NCBI GenBank assembly: GCA_963924565.1 | Contig: OZ004609.1 | Location: 17,918,001 to 17,982,000 of the forward strand | DNA length: 64,000 bases | DNA from: Ascidiella aspersa | Lineage: Eukaryota | Direction: 5' to 3' | Shown: positions 5,718 through 46,100 of the stretch, piece by piece | How positions within the stretch are numbered: position 1 is the first letter of the stretch | Layout of the letters: each line of letters opens with the position of its first letter | The notes under the pieces: generated by a model | Told to the model about the DNA's origin: nothing | The model's input: only the letters and a program-made list of their open reading frames with translations | Database searches by the model: none | Translations under genes and position numbers: made by a program

Positions 5718-6659
5718 ATGCCTGTATGCGGTGTCCCACAAGGTTGTATATTAGCACCTCTCCTGTTTCAAATTTACATTAATGACTTACCAATAAACTC
5801 AAATATAAATTGTAGTTTATACGCAGATGATACTGTCATTTACTCTTCTAACAAAGACATAAAACAGCTTCAAAAAATAATTCAAATAGATATAGAAAAA
5901 ATTGACCACTGGTTTCGGGCTAATAAATTATCAATTAATCATCCTAAAACACATTACTTGGTAACCAATTCAAATTTGGAAATAGAAAATCAATTCAGTA
6001 TTAAAATAAGGGATAATAAACTGAAACAGGTAAATTCAGCGAAATATTTAGGCCTCATCATAGATGATAAATTGTCATGGATACCTCATATTAAAATGAT
6101 TGAACAAAAGATATCTAGGGGAATTGGACTCTTATCAAAAATGAAATACTATTTGGACACTCATGCACTTCGCCTTTTGTATTATAGCTTAATCAATACT
6201 CATCTTCGATATTGTGTTGTAACCTGGGGTAGAGCTTATCCAACTAAATTAAAACATCTTGAAGTACTACAGAATAGGGCAATCCAAATTTTAAGCGGCA
6301 CCCCTCCTAAAACAAGATTACTTCCATTATATCATAACCACTCAATTTTAAAATTGCACGACCTAACCAAATTGGAAATATTGCAAATAATTCATAACTT
6401 TAAAAACAACAAATTACCAGAAACATTGGCAAATTTGATGGCCCCCCTAGAAATCTTACATTCCCATAATACAAGGCTGCGGGATAAACAAAACTATTTT
6501 CAAGTCGGCGCCTCCACCAACTCAGGAAGAAAAACCATAGGATTTTTAGGGCCAAAATATTGGGAGAATTTAGATATAAATATTAAACTATTACCATACA
6601 AGTCATTTGTTAAGGCAATTAAACTAATGTTGTTGAACTTTTACCACGAGGGAACGTAA
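5718..6659 (+). pseudogene. LINE reverse transcriptase ORF2, C-terminal fragment
   Basis: 313-aa ORF with GVPQG, YADD and YLG motifs. The upstream part of the RT domain is in another frame and is 5'-truncated. Confidence 0.88.
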
Positions 6660-11188: not shown

Positions 11189-14100
11189 ATGAGGCTTGTA
11201 TTTGTAGTGCTTGTGGTAGCTTGCTTTTGGCATACTACGCGTTCAATCACCACAATTTCACCAGGACTACCACCAGCGGAAAATTGCAAACACTACAAAT
11301 CTTTGATCACCGACCTTCTAGTGACAGTGTCTGCTTCGTTTCTAGCGGACAACCCTCGCGGCACTGACCCTGCCCTTAATCCGCAGCGTGTGCGCCCGCA
11401 CTCCCCAGATGGCCTGTTTCGGGCATATTATGGAGTCGGTGCATCGGCCGAAGAGTTCAAGAAGGCGATTCTCGACATGGTGTATCTGAAATTCGGCAAG
11501 ACCCAAAAAATGGATCGCAATCAATTGCGCAGAAACATTGCCCTTTATGTATCAGCTGGCAGCTTCAATCTAGCCCGACATACCATGGGACAACTGCTTT
11601 TTGCAATCACCGGCGACTATGCGGGGCTTGACAAGGCTTGGGTGACTGCGGCTTGCCTGGCTTTCAGTCGCGTTCAGACTGCAGAAACCGCTTTAGGCAT
11701 TGAGTTCTCTAGGTAAGGATTGTAGTTTAACTGAAACATTCGTTCTCGAGGAGACCACAGGTATTTGTGTCAAGTGTCCTCTTATAAAATAAGTATCCAC
11801 TCTTTAAAGCTGAACTAAGAATATTGACGTGTGCAAAATATTTCCTCATTTCAGGTTTGCGGTAAACCTCCTAAATTTAAACACGAAAGCTTCAAATAGA
11901 ATTTAAGTTGGTGTTTTAACAAAAACTCTTTCCTAAGTTTGCACGCATTTAGAATTGTGTAATAAATTAATAATGCTTGCAAGGTAAAAAAAAAATGCTG
12001 ACAAGCTATTTTCGATTCGGCGCCCACACAAATGTCATGTCACAGCAATACCGCCATTGGGTTAGTTAATCGAATCCAGCTAAGGTAAAAAAAAATTGTT
12101 GGTGACAGCTAATGTACAACATTCTTTCTAGTACAGTGGATCCCAACCTGGGAGTGTGCGGCCCCCAAAGAGGTCGCAATGGGTTGTCTGGAGGGTTGCC
12201 GTGTAGTATTTGATAAAGAAAAATGCATATGAAATAATAAAGATAAACAAAAAGTTTAGCAGTATAAAAGGAGAAAAAGAAACCGCCCGTCAAACATTTG
12301 TCTTTATGTGGCTTTCGCTGCAGTAAACCAGTTATGTTTATGACGTCACCATAACACTTTTCAATTATTGAATCAAGCGTAGCTACAGTCAAACGATGGC
12401 TAATAAAAATGAATGGACGCTCAAACCGTAACTTTAGCTTGTTGTGCATACTTAAATCCGAACATTTTAGCCAAATTTCGATGCAATCCGTCTAGATTTT
12501 TCCCAATTTGAATTTGCTAATTTTTAAATGTGTGTCGCGAGAACAAAAATTTGAGAACCAGTATCACTGTCCTAATAGTATTTCATCCAGTTTCCCTTCT
12601 GTGTTATGACATTGCACTTTCTACACTTAGGCTAAGAAACGAAGTTGGGGACTTGGAGTACGGCAGTTTTCTGGCTGTGGGAAGCGGAAAGACGCTGGCG
12701 TTTGTTATCGACGATACCGGAAGTATGGGAGGAGAGATACGGGATGCACAGCAGCGAGTCAACGTAACGTGTTTCTTATATATATCCGTATAAATCTATT
12801 TATATTAGCGAAACTGAGAATCAGTACAGATTAACATAGTGCTTTTCATTGTTCATTAATGAGCCAGAGAACCCTAGAAAATAACCTCGCAATGCCGTGT
12901 AATTGGATAGCGAACGAATGGCTGAATCCAGAGATACCTATTTCAAAATTTACCCAGTACTGTCAAAGGTGTTCACCATAAACAAATTGATCTTACCAAC
13001 TGTTAGTTGGTTGCCTTTTGCCTCATGTGTAATGGCGAGTGTTGCATATTGCCGCAAGATTCATTTCATAAATTTGTATACCAATATTGTAAAGGTTCTT
13101 TTCACGTCATGGTTTTATCTTGCTGTGAAATTTAACGATATCGTATAACCGATGTTTTTAAGCTGGGCTACATTTTGTCATAAGTATACAACAGTTTATC
13201 TTGTGTTACGTTTTGTTGCCATTGTCTTATTTCTTCTGTTTTATGTTGCTTGATTGGTATTTTAGTTGATCATTGATCATTTACAAAACTCGTTGGATCG
13301 ACCCCAGTCTTTCGTCCTCGTACCTTTCAACGATCCCAGGGTCGGTCCTCTCACTGTGACGAGGGATCCAAACACTTTTAAGGCTGCTATTAATAAGTAA
13401 TTGAATTTACTATTATTTTATGTAATTTATCTGCTATATATATAAATTTAGCCAAATTTACTTTATTTTGTATATTATTATATATTTTTTTTGTTTATAA
13501 GTAATACCCGACTAGAAAAACACATGACGTTGTTTATAGGTCGTATAATCGATTTTAATTGAATTCATGTTCTGATAGAAGATAGAGGATAAAACGCATG
13601 TGTAATAGGTATTTTGCAGGGCATAATACACTGACTAGAAGTAGTAATGGCTGGTCGATCATTCCCAGATCACTAGGATCTGATTGTAATAACAAATAGT
13701 TGGTTTCGGTTGGTTGGTGGGTTGTGTTGCGTTGTATATGGGAAACTGTTCTTCTCTTTTAACAAGATGATGAAATCCCTAAAAGCCCACTGCCCATAAC
13801 GAACGGGACACTTTTTGTTTAAAGCCGCCCTTTTGACAAATAAACACTTAAGGATATAAAGGGGCATACAAACCACGACAATAAAGACTACATTATACTT
13901 GTTTTGATTGTATAATTCTGTTTTGTAGACTGTTTGCATCTGGAGGCGGAGATGCCCCAGAATTATGTCTTCGCGGAATACAGATCGCATTGGAAAACTG
14001 TAGAGCTGGTTCCATTGTTTATGTCATAACCGATGTCCATGCGAAGGATTATCATTTACAGGTGAAACATGCATAAGTTTTTCTTATTACAAAATTATGC

Positions 14101-40100: not shown

Positions 40101-43100
40101 AGGTAGGAAGTCTAATAGTTAGTTCAACAGGCGCACGTTCGCTAAACTTAGACCGCCTCAAGGGCGTGCGTAGCAGCGCATAATTGTTGGTTGGATGTAT
40201 GGCTGCATTTTATATGGTGTATACGTTTTCTTATAGTTTGTCCGTATGCACGTTTGAACCGGTGCAGAAGTGAAATACGTCTTGATCTTATCGACAGACC
40301 GGTTGGTGCACATTTTATGAAACATCACACATTTAAAAGATATCTGAGTCTCGGTAATTTAAAAATTACACTACGCCACCCACAAGAGACTCGCTTTTGG
40401 ACAACACGTTATAAAAAAGTTTAATGACTTAAACGCCGGACTCAATCGTAATTTTGGTTTCATGAAACATTACGCGCTGTTTTAGCGAACGTGCGCCTTT
40501 GGAACTGTTAGAAATGAAACATCCTACCTTTTATCACCTTTTACTTTAGCTTGTTTTAACCGTTATTTTTCTTTTCTTACTTTGACCTGATAAAGCACGG
40601 TTGTGCGAAAGCTCGTCAGCAGTATAATACAATTTGTCAACATCGCCACTTGTTTTAAAATTCGATAAAATAACTTGAAATTGTTCTATGCATACAACAA
40701 ACTACAAAAAACCTGAAACAACTTCTTGATCACAGACTACCTATGTTTGTCCCTATTTTCCGTTTTTTTTACTTCGTCATTGACTCAGATACAACTTCGT
40801 GACCCCACTGACCTCGCTGGTGGTGATCCGCTCCGAGGACCGGAAACAAATCGAGGAAGATCTGAAAGATGCGGAGAAGCTGCGGAAGCAGGAGGAGCAG
40901 GAGGGACTCCGGTCGATCGCGGCGATCTGGACGACGACGACCACCACGCGTGCTCCTCCTCCTCCTCCCATGCGACATCTCGCCTATGACGGCTCTCGTT
41001 CAGGAGGAGGTGGATTTTACGGCGACCCTCACTTCGTTGTTCCTCTTCGGGAGGACACGAAACTTTGCTTCAACTGGGACGGGAAAGACAACGAGGTGGG
41101 AAACTCCATCGGTTTCTTCTCCAAAAAAATAAAAAATAAAAAAATCGCACGGATTTTATAATTTTCGACGTAAATTGTATCAGTGCTTTTCAACCGGGTG
41201 TATCGTACACCCCAGGGTGTACCAGATTTTTTGAAGGGTGAACCACGTTGGCGGGGTGTTGTGGGGTGCAAAAGATACCGCATTACAATAAAGTCTATGA
41301 TCATAATAAATAAACAGGTGTTTTACCAGTCTGACTTGAGTGTACAATACATGGCACAACCTGTATTTAAGCGTACGTAGCTTGTAAGATACTATTTTTT
41401 ATTTGTGTCATCATAACCATTATTTCCTGGGGTGTACAAGTTCTTTAGTAAACGTAAAAGTGTGTACTGTTCCAAAAAAGGTTGACAAGCACCGAATTAT
41501 ATTACATTTTCCTTACAAGGTACCTACAAAGGTAGATTATAAACAGCAATTAATGACTAAACTGTATTTAAAACTCTGCTGCAGATCTACAACTTGTTCT
41601 ACAATCCCGTCAGCCGCGTCACGGTTAATGGTTTGCTTATCGTCAGGGACGTTGCCAAGCTTAAAAAGCCGGGATCCTTCATTTCAAAATTGGCTATCTA
41701 TCTGCCTGAGAGGAACTTTCGAATTATTGTAAGTTTATGTTCGTATCTTATATTTCCTGTGATTCTTTGGTAAAACCAGTTAGAATTCTGCATTTGTGTG
41801 CCAATTAACATCAAATTCTAATACGCGTGTTATGAGTGAAATGCCCTTGCAAGAACGGCGTGCCTAAGAAGCAAAAATTGTAACAAATTTTAAAATTTCC
41901 TAAATGTTCTGGCGTTTATGTTAAGCTCCGGACATGGCCCAAGATACATTACGGGATATAACGTATCCGAAGTACAACAAGCTTCACAACTTTTAACCTT
42001 CCCTACCCTATCAGAGGCATTGCGTCCGGAGCGTTGTTCCGAATACCTACTGGTGGATGTTTGAAAATAATTTTCTCCATTGTTCAAAGCTTCAGAATGC
42101 AAACTCTTAGGAACTTTAGTGTAACCCTTTCAGTACAAACTTATTTTGTTTTTTTTACGAACGTAAAGTGCTTGTAAAGAAATGCCCAACTTCTGACTAA
42201 CGAATTACAGAAACTTGTCGACAATGGATGCACCCGGCAGTCTAAGCCATAAATATTCAAATTGTTTCGTTTGAGTTGGGCGATTTTTTTTAAATGATGG
42301 TGAAACGTCATCCTATCTATATGAAGACCGTTCCACTTTAGGCCTGGATCTGACTTTTAATTAATATTTAAAAAACACTGTAACATTTTATAGGTTACCC
42401 CTTATAACGTGACGATTTGGCGCAACGATTATTCCAAACCACTGATATTCAACGTCACCTACCTAATGACCTTCACCAGAAAAGGAATTAGCGTGAAATT
42501 TCTTCGCGCAACTCACAGCACCGCGAAGATACAAGTTTTCTGCTACGGTTTAATATTTAACGTAAGTTCAAGATTGGAAACTGGTTTAAAGTTAAATTTG
42601 TGTGCGTTAAATCGAATCCAATTTTCGCTTCTTTGTATAGATCACTTCATACAGTAAGTGCTGTATAAACTATACACAATTTGAATAATAACAAGTGATG
42701 CAGAAATGAGTTGCAAAGTTTGCCTGGCTACTGTTTTTTTGCTCATGACGAACTCGTTTGCGATGATTTGAATGGTATATACAAGTTAAGATTTTTTATT
42801 TAAAGCGGATCCGTAACGCCGTTTTATCTTGGTAATATACTTCAAGAAAGCCTTGCAAGTGACATGTCAACTTACAGGAATATGCAGGTAAATGCCGCCG
42901 GCGTTTATCCATTCCTAATTTCTGAAACCGTGTAGCATACCACGGCGCACGTAAATTATGTGCCATAGTACAGCTTAAGCATAAGACTATGCTTTATCTG
43001 GATCTCGGAAAAGTTCATCGTTGGCTAACTACTGTACATTTTGTGGATTTGTTTATGTAATAGGCAGCGTTGTAAACTAGTCATTTTGAAATGACTCAAT

Positions 43101-46100
43101 ATCCAGTCAAGTCATTCGTAAAATAACTTATTCAAGTCAGGTCTTTTGCAAAAAATAACAAGTGAAGTCCCAGTCCAACTTAATTGCACTTAAGTCAAGT
43201 CATTCTTTACAACTACAACACTGATAATAGGTAAAACAATCGTGGTACGAAGAATGTTTTTTATAATGTCACTTTCGCCTTTTAGAGTAGTTTGCATCTA
43301 TAACGAACCTGTGCAAGAATATTCTAATGTTTTGACCACTTTAAAAGGTTTAAAATAAATATGTTTTATTAATAAATACATTTAACGAAAACATAACAAT
43401 AGAGTGTAATGGCCATTTACGAATAAATATGCACGTAGAAACACAACAAATGCTCGAAAAGAATCACAATAGAAACAAAAATGTTGAATCGGACATGTTT
43501 AAGCAGCTCTTGGTATAAATATTAAAAAAGGAACGTCAAGAAATAACAAAAAAGAGCGACGAACTACAAACTCTGTGGAATGAGGTATGTTGCAAAAGAT
43601 AAAAACGATGAACTTTAGTTTAGTACCAGCAACGAGAGCGGCACATGCCGCAGGTAATCCTCACTCCGCGGATGCGCGCGTTCTGATATCTCCACTTTCT
43701 TCTACGGCGCATTGTTCCTCGTCGTTTTCTTGTCATTCCGCTCTTTGTTGCTCTTTTGGTGCGAGAAAATTCTAAAGGAAAAAAGAAATACGTGATTGGT
43801 GACGAAGGCATAATTTATTTACGGCAGGCGCTAGAACTCTGCACAGTGTGACTCGCACAGACATTCCCAGCACAGAAATAATCAGATTAACCACAAACCC
43901 GAGCGAAAGTTCCGAAAATAAACACGACATATACATCAAGTTACTTGTTTTGAGCGGCTTTCACACGACTTAATGCGATGATTATCCGGCGGTGAATTCC
44001 ACCGTATAGCTATTATTTCATTCGCTTTTAAGTCATCTTATCTTCAAGTGTAATTGTAAATATACCTTCTTCGTCCGAGATGCTTCTCTTTGTCAACACG
44101 CCAGTGTGGCAGCGGTGTACCAACAGGTTACACTTCATCTTAACAATAAAGCCGCATCGTTGCTGCAATTGTTTCTTAACATGTTTCCTAAAAAGAAGAA
44201 GAAAACATTCGTTTTAGACTTGATTTACCCAAATTAAGCAACCTGACTGCGTGTTTAGCATTGCTTTAAACGTCAGGGTACTATATAAATTCATTGCATA
44301 TACAGTACTTACTTTGAAAATATTTTATCCGGCTTTCCCACTCTTCTTGTCACAAGGGATCCAGTTGGGGTTTTGCCTCTTCTGCGACGCCTGGCTTCCC
44401 CAGGCATGACAAGGAACAGCAAGGCAAGTACAAGGCATAATAACACGCATTGACTAATTCCGGACATGACAGTGTTTTACGTATTCTTATAATCGCGTAA
44501 AGGTTTGCTGTGGCATTCCCGGCGAGTCTATGTTGCCACGTGGTGCCAAACGTCTTTTATAGCCACCGCCTTTTTTCTCACCGGTTCAAAATCGATCGCC
44601 CGGGGAATTTCGTACTGCGACCGTAAAAAAGCGCGTCAAATCGATAGGTTGTCGTTTCAAAGGCCATTTCCGCCTAAATAATTACAAAAAAATTGTTTTT
44701 CGATTAGCTTTATTGCTTTGGCAAAGAGTAGCTAAAAGGCCGAATTAACTTTGGGGAAATCAGTTATCTTTGCCAGAATTCGCACAAATACGAATTCTCA
44801 AGTAAACCAAGTGGCAAATTTACTTACATTCGATGGTAAGTCCAACATATAATAGTCATGGATTATTAGATGATGTGGTACAAAGTTTGTTTCTTCGTTC
44901 TAAGTTGATATACGTTAGCAATTATACATTTTATTCTGTAACTTGTCTGGTTTGCATCATTGATCTACTGAGTCGCTTATTCTGTCGAAGGCTTTCGGTG
45001 TACAATTATGTTTTTTAATTATTCTTTTGAACGTAGCCACTCTACAGCAAATCTACTGTGAGTTTGTGGAAAAACTCAATTGATCTTTAATTTGTCAGCA
45101 TGACGTAGTTTGCTGGGTAATATAATGACCAATAAGGCCCTTTGGAATGTGTGCACCCTCATTTAATGCGACATTTTTACGCATTAGATCAACACGCATC
45201 AGGGCAAAAATCCAATTAGTTTGGGGTTTGCGTCACTGGAGAGCGTTATTCGACAAATCAATCTTTGTTTGATATTGCTAACATCCAATGTGGTTACGTA
45301 AAATGTCGAATGGAGCGTTTTGCTTCGTTTGTTTGCACAGAAAACAAAAGAGCTTACTCACACAAGGCACAAACAAAGGCGACGTAATTAGGGTCTTCCC
45401 CCGAAGGTGTCGTCAAACCGTTCCGCGTGAACTTGAATCCCATAGTTTCCTTCGAAGAACAAAGCTGGCAGCAGCACTTTCTCTTTTATACGTTGGTGGT
45501 GATTAATTATAGGTTGTTTCACTATAGGTAGGGCGGGCGAAAAAGTTGTTTTTACCTCGTTCGATCTTCGTGACCTGCTTAAGCACATGCTTTGTCAAGC
45601 ACAACAAAGAATCACACAATGTTTTTACCGATGACTGGTTTGATTGCGAAACTTGCGCGTATCAAAAACGAACACAAAATAAAATTTAGCCAAAGCTACA
45701 GATTTAACGTGGCATGACCAGCATACGAAGCTTATCGCGCTGCCGATATACTTTCGTTAAAAATTTCGCAAGTCCAGAAATTAGTCACCCAGCATTTCGT
45801 CAGATTTCCCATAAAGCTTTGTTATACGTCACTGATGTTGGCAGCTGCCCTGTACATTAGTAACGTATGCTTTGTTGGTTTTGCCTTGGGCACTCAGAGA
45901 TATAGTATGTGGCAAAAAAAGCTTGTACTCCACTGCGTATAGTGGTTTTGCGATTTAAGCGATGCCTGGTTTCATTAAAAAGGCATTTGTTTATCCTATA
46001 CCGTAATGTAATTTACCTGAAAATAACTCAACCGTATTTCACGAATAGCAACATTTCATGATATTTAAATCATTATAGGAAAAAGTTATGAGAAATACAC

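What the first reader, a model, noticed from the sequence alone, without database searches (positions are those of the whole stretch)
43620..44467. Hidden 3-exon antisense gene for a polycationic two-chain six-Cys pro-peptide
Seen: only exon 3 shows in the ORF track. Splicing gives a 25-aa signal peptide and a 117-aa pro-region with 39 Lys/Arg and 5 Asp/Glu. Four of the acidic residues sit in a spacer flanked by convertase sites (KR-SISDEEEFS-RTKR). Three Cys lie before the spacer (C-x7-C-x6-C) and three after (C-x2-C-x3-C). TATA box and AATAAA are correctly placed. Known: a removable connecting peptide is insulin-like logic, but the Cys spacing is not insulin; acidic pro-pieces are typical of antimicrobial peptide precursors. 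Inference: a new disulfide-linked antimicrobial, glycosaminoglycan-binding or signalling peptide.
Basis: partly seen in the sequence, partly recalled or inferred. Interest (0 to 1): 0.85.

Follow-up and report, generated by a model that had tools for sequence, protein, structure and literature searches.

The report
Ascidian two-chain six-cysteine peptide gene
This is a real, transcribed three-exon gene of a sea squirt; it encodes a secreted, very basic pro-peptide of an undescribed family found across ascidians, whose conserved cleavage sites and six cysteines predict a disulfide-linked two-chain peptide of unknown role.

Summary
The minus strand carries three exons (44467-44313, 44187-44066, 43771-43620) with GT-AG introns, a TATA box and an AATAAA signal. 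The product is 142 aa: a 25-aa signal peptide and a 117-aa pro-region with 39 K/R, 5 D/E and 6 Cys. Both predicted junctions appear in a transcriptome-like assembly and in stranded raw RNA reads, and all reads give a minus-strand RNA.

The gene is not an orphan. The same genome holds eight paralogous loci. A profile of them finds about 15 clusters of 106-185 aa proteins in Ciona, Phallusia, Clavelina and Styela, all named "uncharacterized". Invariant features are C-x7-C-x6-C, a KR six residues later, and C-x2-C-x3-C-W at the C-terminus. Between them lie a variable acidic spacer and a second dibasic site. The three-exon structure (intron phases 2 and 1) is shared by Ciona, Styela and Clavelina.

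No Pfam family, solved structure or fold matches. The cysteine spacing fails the insulin, centrocin and turgencin tests. However, the intron plan equals that of Dilp7-type insulin genes.

Best reading: a convertase-processed two-chain peptide, more likely a signalling ligand than an antimicrobial. The role is unproven.

The parts
44555..44561 (-). TATA box (TATAAAA), 88-94 nt upstream of the ATG
   Evidence: RNA cover ends inside bin 44419-44519
44313..44467 (-). Exon 1, coding part: ATG at 44467, 51 codons plus 2 nt (ends in phase 2)
   Evidence: the joint to exon 2 is seen in RNA
44393..44467 (-). Predicted 25-aa signal peptide (hydrophobic core, G-E-A before the cut)
   Evidence: cleavage site inferred from the -3/-1 rule, not computed
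44188..44312 (-). Intron 1, 125 nt, GT..AG, phase 2
   Evidence: skipped in an X2 contig (depth 132) and one X5 read; same phase in Ciona, Styela and Clavelina homologues
44066..44187 (-). Exon 2, 122 nt: basic lead-in, chain 1, KR and start of the acidic spacer
44091..44156 (-). Chain 1 core: C-x7-C-x6-C plus six residues (22 aa, net +3)
   Evidence: the homologous segment is a helix with pLDDT about 80 in AlphaFold2 models of relatives
44085..44090 (-). First dibasic site KR; R invariant and K in at least 90% of the family
43764..44084 (-). Acidic spacer SISDEE-E-FS, split by intron 2 (coding parts 44084-44066 and 43771-43764)
   Evidence: the spacer is variable in length and sequence across the family
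43772..44065 (-). Intron 2, 294 nt, GT..AG, phase 1, inside the spacer
   Evidence: skipped in an X2 contig (depth 108) and one X5 read; same position and phase in Ciona, Styela and Clavelina and in paralogue L008
43620..43771 (-). Exon 3, coding part: end of the spacer, RTKR, chain 2, stop TAA (43622-43620)
43752..43763 (-). Second cleavage motif RTKR. A common allele (43762 C>G, 43765 G>A) gives FFPTKR, which keeps the KR
43623..43751 (-). Chain 2 region, 43 aa. It has internal polybasic sites (RKRR, RRRRK); RKRR aligns with the family's second dibasic site. It ends in the Cys motif
43626..43652 (-). C-x2-C-x3-C-W motif, invariant in the family, followed here by Y and the stop
43365..43370 (-). 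AATAAA poly(A) signal, about 250 nt after the stop
   Evidence: RNA reads reach at least about 43422

Best explanation
The locus is a working gene for a secreted prepropeptide. It belongs to an unnamed family found across ascidians. After the signal peptide is removed, the pro-protein is probably cut by subtilisin-like proprotein convertases at two places: the invariant KR six residues after the third Cys, and a second dibasic or polybasic site downstream of the acidic spacer (RTKR and/or RKRR/RRRRK in this copy). The variable acidic spacer is discarded. This leaves chain 1, an amphipathic helix with three Cys, and chain 2, which ends in C-x2-C-x3-C-W. The two chains are held together by disulfides formed in the pro-form, as in proinsulin. 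The polybasic tracts would serve as processing sites and perhaps as glycosaminoglycan anchors. The conserved helix and CW core would be the part that a partner recognises. I take the mature product to be an extracellular signalling ligand (hormone- or neuropeptide-like) rather than a membrane-active antimicrobial. Shown: the gene, its splicing, its strand, the family, the invariant residues and the shared gene structure. Inferred: the signal-peptide cut, convertase cleavage, inter-chain disulfides and the role.
For: Gene and transcript. Family: there are eight loci in the same genome, with signal-peptide first exons read in L007 and L003 and candidate ones found by pattern in L004, L008, L009 and L010. 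A profile search of 1.84 billion proteins gave 16 hits, 15 of them true. They are 106-185 aa long, and the match ends at or within a few residues of the C-terminus. Named members come from Ciona intestinalis, C. savignyi, Phallusia mammillata, Clavelina lepadiformis and Styela clava, which covers all three ascidian orders by my knowledge of ascidian taxonomy. Invariant columns are the six Cys, the R of KR and the final W. Chain 1 is net +2 to +6 in all but one member, the spacer is -16 to 0, and chain 2 is +4 to +23. Mean pairwise identity is 0.31 in chain 1 and 0.44 in the last 14 residues of chain 2, against 0.08 in the signal/pro part and 0.07 in the spacer. This is the prohormone pattern. 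Centrocin antimicrobial precursors show the opposite: the pro-pieces are conserved and the chains vary (PMC4805251). Some chain-2 cores behind the last basic cluster are neutral or acidic (P0009, P0015), so charge is not the conserved feature. Subtypes are shared between orders: L004 resembles Ciona P0006 and Clavelina P0007/P0008, and the 'CG' type unites the window gene with P0005, P0013 and P0014. The gene structure, with a phase 2 intron before chain 1 and a phase 1 intron inside the spacer, is the same in the window gene, L008, Clavelina, Styela and Ciona. AlphaFold2 models of two relatives give a helix over chain 1 and a short helix over the CW motif. In the L003 model both have pLDDT about 80 and the spacer is below 50. 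In the Ciona P0006 model chain 1 is about 78-79, the CW end 59-67 and the spacer about 50.
Against: No peptide has been observed: cleavage, disulfide pairing and secretion are all inferred. The pro-region of this copy is extremely cationic (39 K/R of 117). There are recent tandem copies on contig C2. An ascidian cationic six-Cys antimicrobial, turgencin, shares the C-x2-C-x3-C half-pattern. All three points fit a defence peptide. No tissue or cell type of expression is known. The Cys spans of the two chains (15 against 7 residues) do not allow a simple three-rung helix-helix ladder, so the pairing is unclear. The complex prediction gave no answer, and the structure models have only middling confidence.
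Confidence: 0.45

Rival explanations
1. Host-defence peptide. The same two-chain (or hairpin) disulfide-stabilised product acts as a cationic antimicrobial or microbe-binding effector, and the acidic spacer neutralises it until it is processed.
For: The chains are strongly cationic and the spacer anionic in nearly all members; this copy is the extreme case. There are recent tandem duplicates on C2 at 7.27-7.37 Mb, and Clavelina and Styela each have several copies on one contig. Two-chain antimicrobials made from one precursor with an excised inter-chain piece exist in sea urchins (centrocins, PMC4805251). An ascidian six-Cys cationic antimicrobial ends in the same C-x2-C-x3-C spacing (turgencin A, PMC7024374).
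Against: Conservation lies in the chains, and the pro-pieces are hypervariable; centrocins show the opposite pattern. Some chain-2 cores are not cationic. Subtypes are kept across ascidian orders. The KR position and the terminal W are invariant, which suggests specific recognition. No expression or activity data are available.
Confidence: 0.25
2. Uncleaved single-chain basic Cys protein. The dibasic sites are not used, and the whole pro-region works as a glycosaminoglycan-, tunic-, nucleic-acid- or metal-binding secreted protein.
For: This copy has very high basic content. C-x2-C and C-H motifs gave weak zinc-ribbon noise hits. The genome is from an ascidian. That ascidians have sulfated-glycan-rich tunic and metal chemistry is my own background knowledge, not tested here.
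Against: An invariant KR at a fixed distance from Cys3 and a second dibasic site after a spacer of freely varying length (8-66 aa) are hard to explain without cleavage. The spacer is predicted to be disordered. The zinc-ribbon hits are far below threshold.
Confidence: 0.12
3. A radically remodelled member of the insulin/relaxin superfamily (Dilp7-type), with chain 1 as the B chain, the spacer as the C-peptide and chain 2 as the A chain.
For: The precursor logic is the same. [quoted passage not shown] Several members have Gly after Cys1, as in insulin B7-B8 (the insulin comparison is from my own knowledge).
Against: The Cys framework is 3+3 with different spacing. Pfam Insulin (PF00049) hits no member at E up to 10 and no family locus in the genome. 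There is no PDB sequence or fold match. Two matching intron phases have a chance of roughly 1 in 9.
Confidence: 0.1
4. A chance ORF assembly or a dead gene.
For: None found.
Against: The spliced, stranded RNA has both exact junctions. The frame is intact. The family and its gene structure are conserved across ascidian orders. The two motifs occur only once in six frames of the 64 kb window.
Confidence: 0.01

Closest known systems
Insulin/relaxin superfamily precursors, especially Dilp7-type genes
   Same: The order is signal peptide, first Cys chain with a central helix, excisable connecting piece flanked by basic sites, then second Cys chain at the C-terminus. There are six Cys in total. A phase 1 intron lies inside the connecting piece, and a phase 2 intron lies between the signal peptide and the first chain (PMC11863921).
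   Different: The Cys are distributed 3+3 (C-x7-C-x6-C and C-x2-C-x3-C), not 2+4 (C-x11-C and CC-x3-C-x8-C). There is no PF00049 signal and no fold or sequence match to solved insulins. The family has polybasic tracts and an invariant C-terminal Trp.
Centrocins (sea-urchin heterodimeric antimicrobial peptides)
   Same: One precursor carries signal peptide, pro-piece, cationic chain, excised inter-chain piece and second chain. The chains are joined by disulfide. The source is a deuterostome invertebrate (PMC4805251).
   Different: Centrocins have one disulfide, not six Cys. Their pro-piece and inter-chain piece are conserved and their chains vary, which is the reverse of this family. The profile search found no sequence similarity.
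Turgencins A/B (six-Cys antimicrobial peptides of the ascidian Synoicum turgens)
   Same: They are ascidian, cationic and have six Cys, and the last three are spaced C-x2-C-x3-C. Their gene is unknown, so a link cannot be excluded.
   Different: They are single 35-36 aa chains with C-x3-C-x4-C in the first half, an 8-residue loop instead of a spacer with cleavage sites, and an amidated C-terminus without CW (PMC7024374).

Membership tests
Unnamed ascidian 6-Cys 'KR...CW' prepropeptide family (e.g. Ciona LOC100181000, Phallusia protein A0A6F9DIP0 (named after Ciona LOC100187420), Styela LOC120332693/120332736/120337889, Clavelina LOC143451389/143451510) | N-terminal signal peptide | tested here: met
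   A hydrophobic N-terminus is read in the window gene, in paralogues and in database members. This is by inspection only, without SignalP.
Unnamed ascidian 6-Cys 'KR...CW' prepropeptide family | C-x7-C-x6-C, followed six residues later by K-R | tested here: met
   Window exon 2. These columns are invariant in alignments A5 and A7. The derived C2 copies have C-x2-C-x6-C.
Unnamed ascidian 6-Cys 'KR...CW' prepropeptide family | Acidic spacer of variable length ending in a dibasic site, then a basic segment ending in C-x2-C-x3-C-W at or next to the C-terminus | tested here: met
   The window copy ends in CWY.
Unnamed ascidian 6-Cys 'KR...CW' prepropeptide family | Three coding exons with intron phases 2 and 1, the second intron inside the spacer | tested here: met
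   Window gene, L008, and Clavelina, Styela and Ciona. The C2 copies lack intron 2.
Unnamed ascidian 6-Cys 'KR...CW' prepropeptide family | Significant profile match | tested here: met
   Exon 2 alone finds paralogue L003 at E 1.2e-4. The paralogue-based profile finds ascidian proteins at E 8e-11 to 4e-4 in 1.84 billion sequences. The window exons are part of that profile.
Insulin/relaxin superfamily | B chain C-x(10-12)-C and A chain CC-x(3-4)-C-x8-C | tested here: not met
   The spacing is C-x7-C-x6-C and C-x2-C-x3-C in all members. The insulin spacing is from my own knowledge.
Insulin/relaxin superfamily | Match to Pfam PF00049 or to solved insulin-like structures | tested here: not met
   No PF00049 hit in 18 members at E up to 10 or at family loci. 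No PDB sequence or fold match. The models have only middling confidence.
Insulin/relaxin superfamily (Dilp7-type) | [quoted passage not shown] | tested here: met
   Searches compared with PMC11863921. This may be coincidence.
Centrocins | Heavy and light chain with one inter-chain disulfide; conserved prepro and inter-chain regions | tested here: not met
   This family has six Cys, and its pro and spacer regions are the least conserved parts (PMC4805251).
Turgencins | Single chain with C-x3-C-x4-C-x8-C-x2-C-x3-C and an amidated C-terminus | tested here: not met
   Only the last half of the pattern is shared. This gene has no Gly amidation signal at its C-terminus.
Any Pfam family (defensins, ShK, zinc ribbons and others) | Score above the gathering threshold | tested here: not met
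   only noise hits with E of 0.019 or more.

The most novel reading that the evidence does not exclude
The family is the tunicate remnant of the Dilp7-type branch of the insulin/relaxin superfamily, a branch reported as lost in chordates. It would have kept the ancestral gene plan (phase 2 and phase 1 introns, B-C-A order, convertase sites) but rebuilt its disulfide framework to 3+3 cysteines. That would make it a new structural class of two-chain hormone with its own receptor.
Probability: 0.1. Interest if true: 0.8.

Novelty: new variant of a known kind. Interest (0 to 1): 0.58.

Why it matters
Tunicates are the closest living relatives of vertebrates, yet their peptide hormones and defence peptides are only partly catalogued. 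This locus exposes a family present in all three ascidian orders. It has several copies per genome, no Pfam model, no solved structure, and no description in the papers I searched. Its invariant features read like a processing blueprint: two cysteine-bearing chains, an excised spacer and a fixed C-terminal Trp. If it is a ligand, it adds an orphan signalling system to the chordate stem. If it is an antimicrobial, it adds a new disulfide scaffold. Either reading can be tested directly in Ciona with existing tools. The match to the Dilp7-type gene plan also raises a testable question about how insulin-like precursors evolve.

Tried and rejected
- **Joined protein not searched.** All searches used single exons by reference or contiguous paralogues and homologues. 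The counts were made piece by piece.
- **Pfam:** nothing on the exon products, on paralogues or on 18 family members at E up to 10.
- **PDB sequence profile search:** only ribosomal-protein noise at E above 0.5.
- **Foldseek against PDB:** no match for either AlphaFold2 model.
- **VIA-align wide search:** no match with Z of 2 or more.
- **ESM Atlas:** no hit of 0.8 or more; a DUF4543 row at 0.76 was not reproduced by Pfam.
- **Complex prediction**, chain 1 against chain 2 of the window gene: no answer (score 0.02). This is not evidence either way.
- **The search for homologous proteins** with the family alignment returned only four members already known, a limit of its word index.
- **The look-up of encoding contigs** for the 63-aa exon-3 ORF: not on record.
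- **Paper searches** for the gene and protein accession numbers and for run DRR09068x found nothing. Topical searches on ascidian antimicrobials and tunicate neuropeptides found no description of this family.
- **The search of earlier findings:** nothing near the locus and nothing by words.
- **Rejected readings:** vanabin (those have 18 Cys; from my own knowledge), zinc ribbon (noise hits only) and protamine-like nuclear protein (a signal peptide is present).
Full report
**1. The observation**

On the minus strand, an ATG at 44467 opens a frame that runs through three exons: 44467-44313, 44187-44066 and 43771-43620. An in-frame TAA lies upstream at 44479. Both introns are canonical. Intron 1 reads AAA|GTAAGT ... 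TTTTCTTCTTCTTTTTAG|G, and intron 2 reads AAG|GTATAT ... TTTCTTTTTTCCTTTAG|A.

I counted residues piece by piece, adding the two split codons (K and E). The product is 142 aa. It has a 25-aa hydrophobic signal-like N-terminus and a 117-aa remainder with 39 K/R, 5 D/E and 6 Cys.

The rest of the description also holds. The Cys lie as C-x7-C-x6-C before the stretch KR-SISDEEEFS-RTKR and as C-x2-C-x3-C after it. TATAAAA is at 44561-44555 and AATAAA at 43370-43365.

Every search used exon references or contiguous relatives.

**2. RNA evidence**

- Run X2 behaves like a transcriptome. Its contig depth is about 117-188 on the exons, low in the introns, and zero in the immediate flanks. One of its contigs joins 44066-44186 to 44312-44424, which is intron 1 with the cut shifted by one base. 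Another joint runs from 43771 to 44066, which is intron 2. Both joints have CT..AC ends, that is GT..AG on the minus strand.
- The stranded raw RNA run X5 shows one read across each joint. Only about 6% of that run was read. Its cover is confined to 43409-44519 and is zero in the middle of intron 2. Every first mate lies on +, as expected for a minus-strand RNA in a usual stranded library.
- No plus-strand RNA overlaps the gene, so 'antisense' means only 'on the minus strand'.
- X5 and a minor X2 contig carry 43762 C>G and 43765 G>A. These change FSRT to FFPT. The RTKR motif loses its P4 Arg but keeps the KR.

**3. It is one of a family**

- Exon 2 alone finds a second locus in the same 308.6-Mb genome at E 1.2e-4.
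- That locus (L003) carries both Cys groups in one open exon.
- Further searches with L003 and with a profile find eight loci in all:
  - the window gene, at C3:17.96 Mb;
  - C3:26.49 Mb (L008);
  - five on C2: 7.274, 7.282, 7.289, 7.365 and 7.585 Mb;
  - C7:20.09 Mb (L004).
- L008 has the same three exons and the same intron phases.
- The C2 copies have a signal-peptide exon ending in phase 2 and a single second exon, so they have lost intron 2.
- The two motif patterns occur once only in six frames of the 64-kb window.

**4. Relatives elsewhere**

A profile of the paralogues (A4) was scored against 1.84 billion representative proteins and gave 16 hits. One (P0004) is a repeat artefact.

The other 15 are 106-185 aa long. 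The match ends at the C-terminus or within a few residues of it.

Their names are all 'uncharacterized protein' or 'unnamed protein product', from these species:
- Ciona intestinalis (LOC100181000);
- Phallusia mammillata (named after Ciona LOC100187420);
- Clavelina lepadiformis (several);
- Styela clava (four loci).

There is also a Ciona savignyi entry misnamed 60S ribosomal protein L34. Four more come from unnamed Logan or JGI contigs.

Together with a cellulose-synthase hit in the genome, this places the window in an ascidian. By my knowledge of ascidian taxonomy, the named species cover all three ascidian orders.

In the alignment the invariant columns are the six Cys, the R of the first KR and the terminal W. 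The K is present in at least 90% of members.

**5. Anatomy of the family**

In almost every member the parts follow the same plan:
- chain 1, from Cys1 to the KR, is 22 aa and net +2 to +6;
- the spacer is 8-66 aa and net -16 to 0;
- a second dibasic site follows the spacer;
- the last part is net +4 to +23 and ends in [ST]-C-x-[LM]-C-x3-C-W.

Mean pairwise identity is 0.31 in chain 1, 0.38 in the four residues after the KR, and 0.44 in the last 14 residues. It is only 0.08 in the signal/pro part and 0.07 in the rest of the spacer.

In the window copy, RKRR aligns with the family's second site. RTKR, RKRR and RRRRK are therefore all candidate cuts. The mature chain 2 may be as short as about 24 residues.

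**6. Gene structure**

I mapped three database proteins onto their genomic loci: Clavelina P0005, Styela P0014 and Ciona P0006. Each has three coding exons. Intron 1 is in phase 2, a few residues before chain 1. Intron 2 is in phase 1, 4-12 residues after the KR.

This is the structure of the window gene and of L008, so it is ancestral for ascidians.

[quoted passage not shown] It also states that this type was lost in chordates (PMC11863921). The match is striking, but by phase alone it could arise by chance about once in nine.

**7. Structure and database comparisons**

AlphaFold2 was run on L003 (81 aa, 25-row alignment) and on Ciona P0006 (26 rows). The models have mean pLDDT 62.5 and 63.5. 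Both show a helix over chain 1 and a short helix over the CW motif.

- L003 model: pLDDT is about 80-84 over chain 1 and about 80 over the CW motif, and the spacer is below 50.
- P0006 model: pLDDT is about 78-79 over chain 1 and only 59-67 over the CW end, and the spacer is about 50.

None of these comparisons gave a match:
- Foldseek and VIA-align;
- the PDB sequence profile;
- Pfam;
- the ESM Atlas.

PF00049 (Insulin) does not hit the family loci. The complex prediction of chain 1 with chain 2 returned 'no answer', so I do not use it.

**8. How it most likely works**

Shown:
- a transcribed, spliced gene;
- a conserved family;
- invariant Cys, KR and W;
- a shared intron plan.

Inferred, from established knowledge of the secretory pathway:
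- the signal peptide is removed;
- disulfides form in the pro-form;
- proprotein convertases cut after the KR and after the second basic site;
- carboxypeptidase trims the basic residues;
- the spacer is lost;
- a two-chain peptide results.

I put two-chain processing at about 0.65.

On the role, I lean towards a specific extracellular ligand, for four reasons:
- the chains are the conserved parts and the pro-pieces are not;
- some chain-2 cores carry no net positive charge;
- subtypes persist across orders;
- the ends are fixed.

Centrocin antimicrobial precursors show the opposite conservation pattern (PMC4805251).

A defence role remains a serious rival, for three reasons:
- the extreme charge of this copy;
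- the tandem duplicates;
- the ascidian antimicrobial turgencin, which shares the C-x2-C-x3-C half-pattern (PMC7024374).

**9. Novelty and verdict**

It is not an orphan, and it is not hidden in other ascidians, where annotation pipelines already predict it. However, the family has no name, no Pfam model and no solved relative, and I found no paper describing it.

It fails the membership tests for insulin, centrocins, turgencins and every Pfam family, although it works by the same precursor logic as the first two. I class it as a new variant of a known kind: a convertase-processed, disulfide-linked two-chain secreted peptide.

Noticed in passing
window 43064-43180: A very high-copy short repeat lies about 200-300 nt beyond the gene's poly(A) signal. 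Summed contig depth is about 100,000 in the DNA-like run X1 and 2,400 in X2. Many contigs break there, and RNA reads occur on both strands. It is probably a SINE- or MITE-like element.
   Followed up: no
window 43762 and 43765: A common two-base variant in exon 3 (C>G and G>A on +) turns FSRT into FFPT. It removes the P4 Arg of RTKR but keeps the KR. It is seen in 6 of 7 X5 RNA reads and in a minor X2 contig. It is an allele or individual difference.
   Followed up: partly
G000 C2:7.274, 7.282, 7.289, 7.365 Mb (L010, L011, L009, L007): Four near-identical copies of the family lie within about 90 kb; L010 and L011 encode the same second-exon peptide. All lack intron 2, and all have C-x2-C instead of C-x7-C in chain 1. 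This is a recent, derived expansion.
   Followed up: partly
P0013 (UniRef H2ZPD3, Ciona savignyi): A member of this family is named '60S ribosomal protein L34' in UniRef. This is evidently a mis-annotation caused by its basic composition.
   Followed up: partly
L022, L023 (JGI samples 3300019010 and 3300018969): Two family members sit on short contigs of 1-2 kb in which the coding frame is not interrupted, so they look like mRNA. They come from environmental JGI samples. Both have a Gly before the first basic site (GRKRR, GRPAKR). The source organisms are unknown. They could extend the family to pelagic tunicates or come from larvae.
   Followed up: no
window 5718-6659 (+): A 313-aa ORF with a reverse-transcriptase-like YADD motif. 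It is probably a non-LTR retrotransposon fragment.
   Followed up: no
window 40799-41161 (+): An open exon-like frame with a Thr/Pro-rich stretch and a GDPHF motif, which recalls the autocleavage sites of RGM or inter-alpha-trypsin-inhibitor heavy chains. Pfam gave no hit at E up to 1. Plus-strand RNA reads at 42500-42600 may belong to the same gene.
   Followed up: partly
window 11189-11716 (+): A 175-aa ORF with a signal-peptide-like start and no Pfam match.
   Followed up: partly
G000 C8:17719295-17719375: This is the only PF00049 (Insulin) match in the genome at E up to 1. It resembles an A chain and lies in a 308-aa open frame.
   Followed up: no
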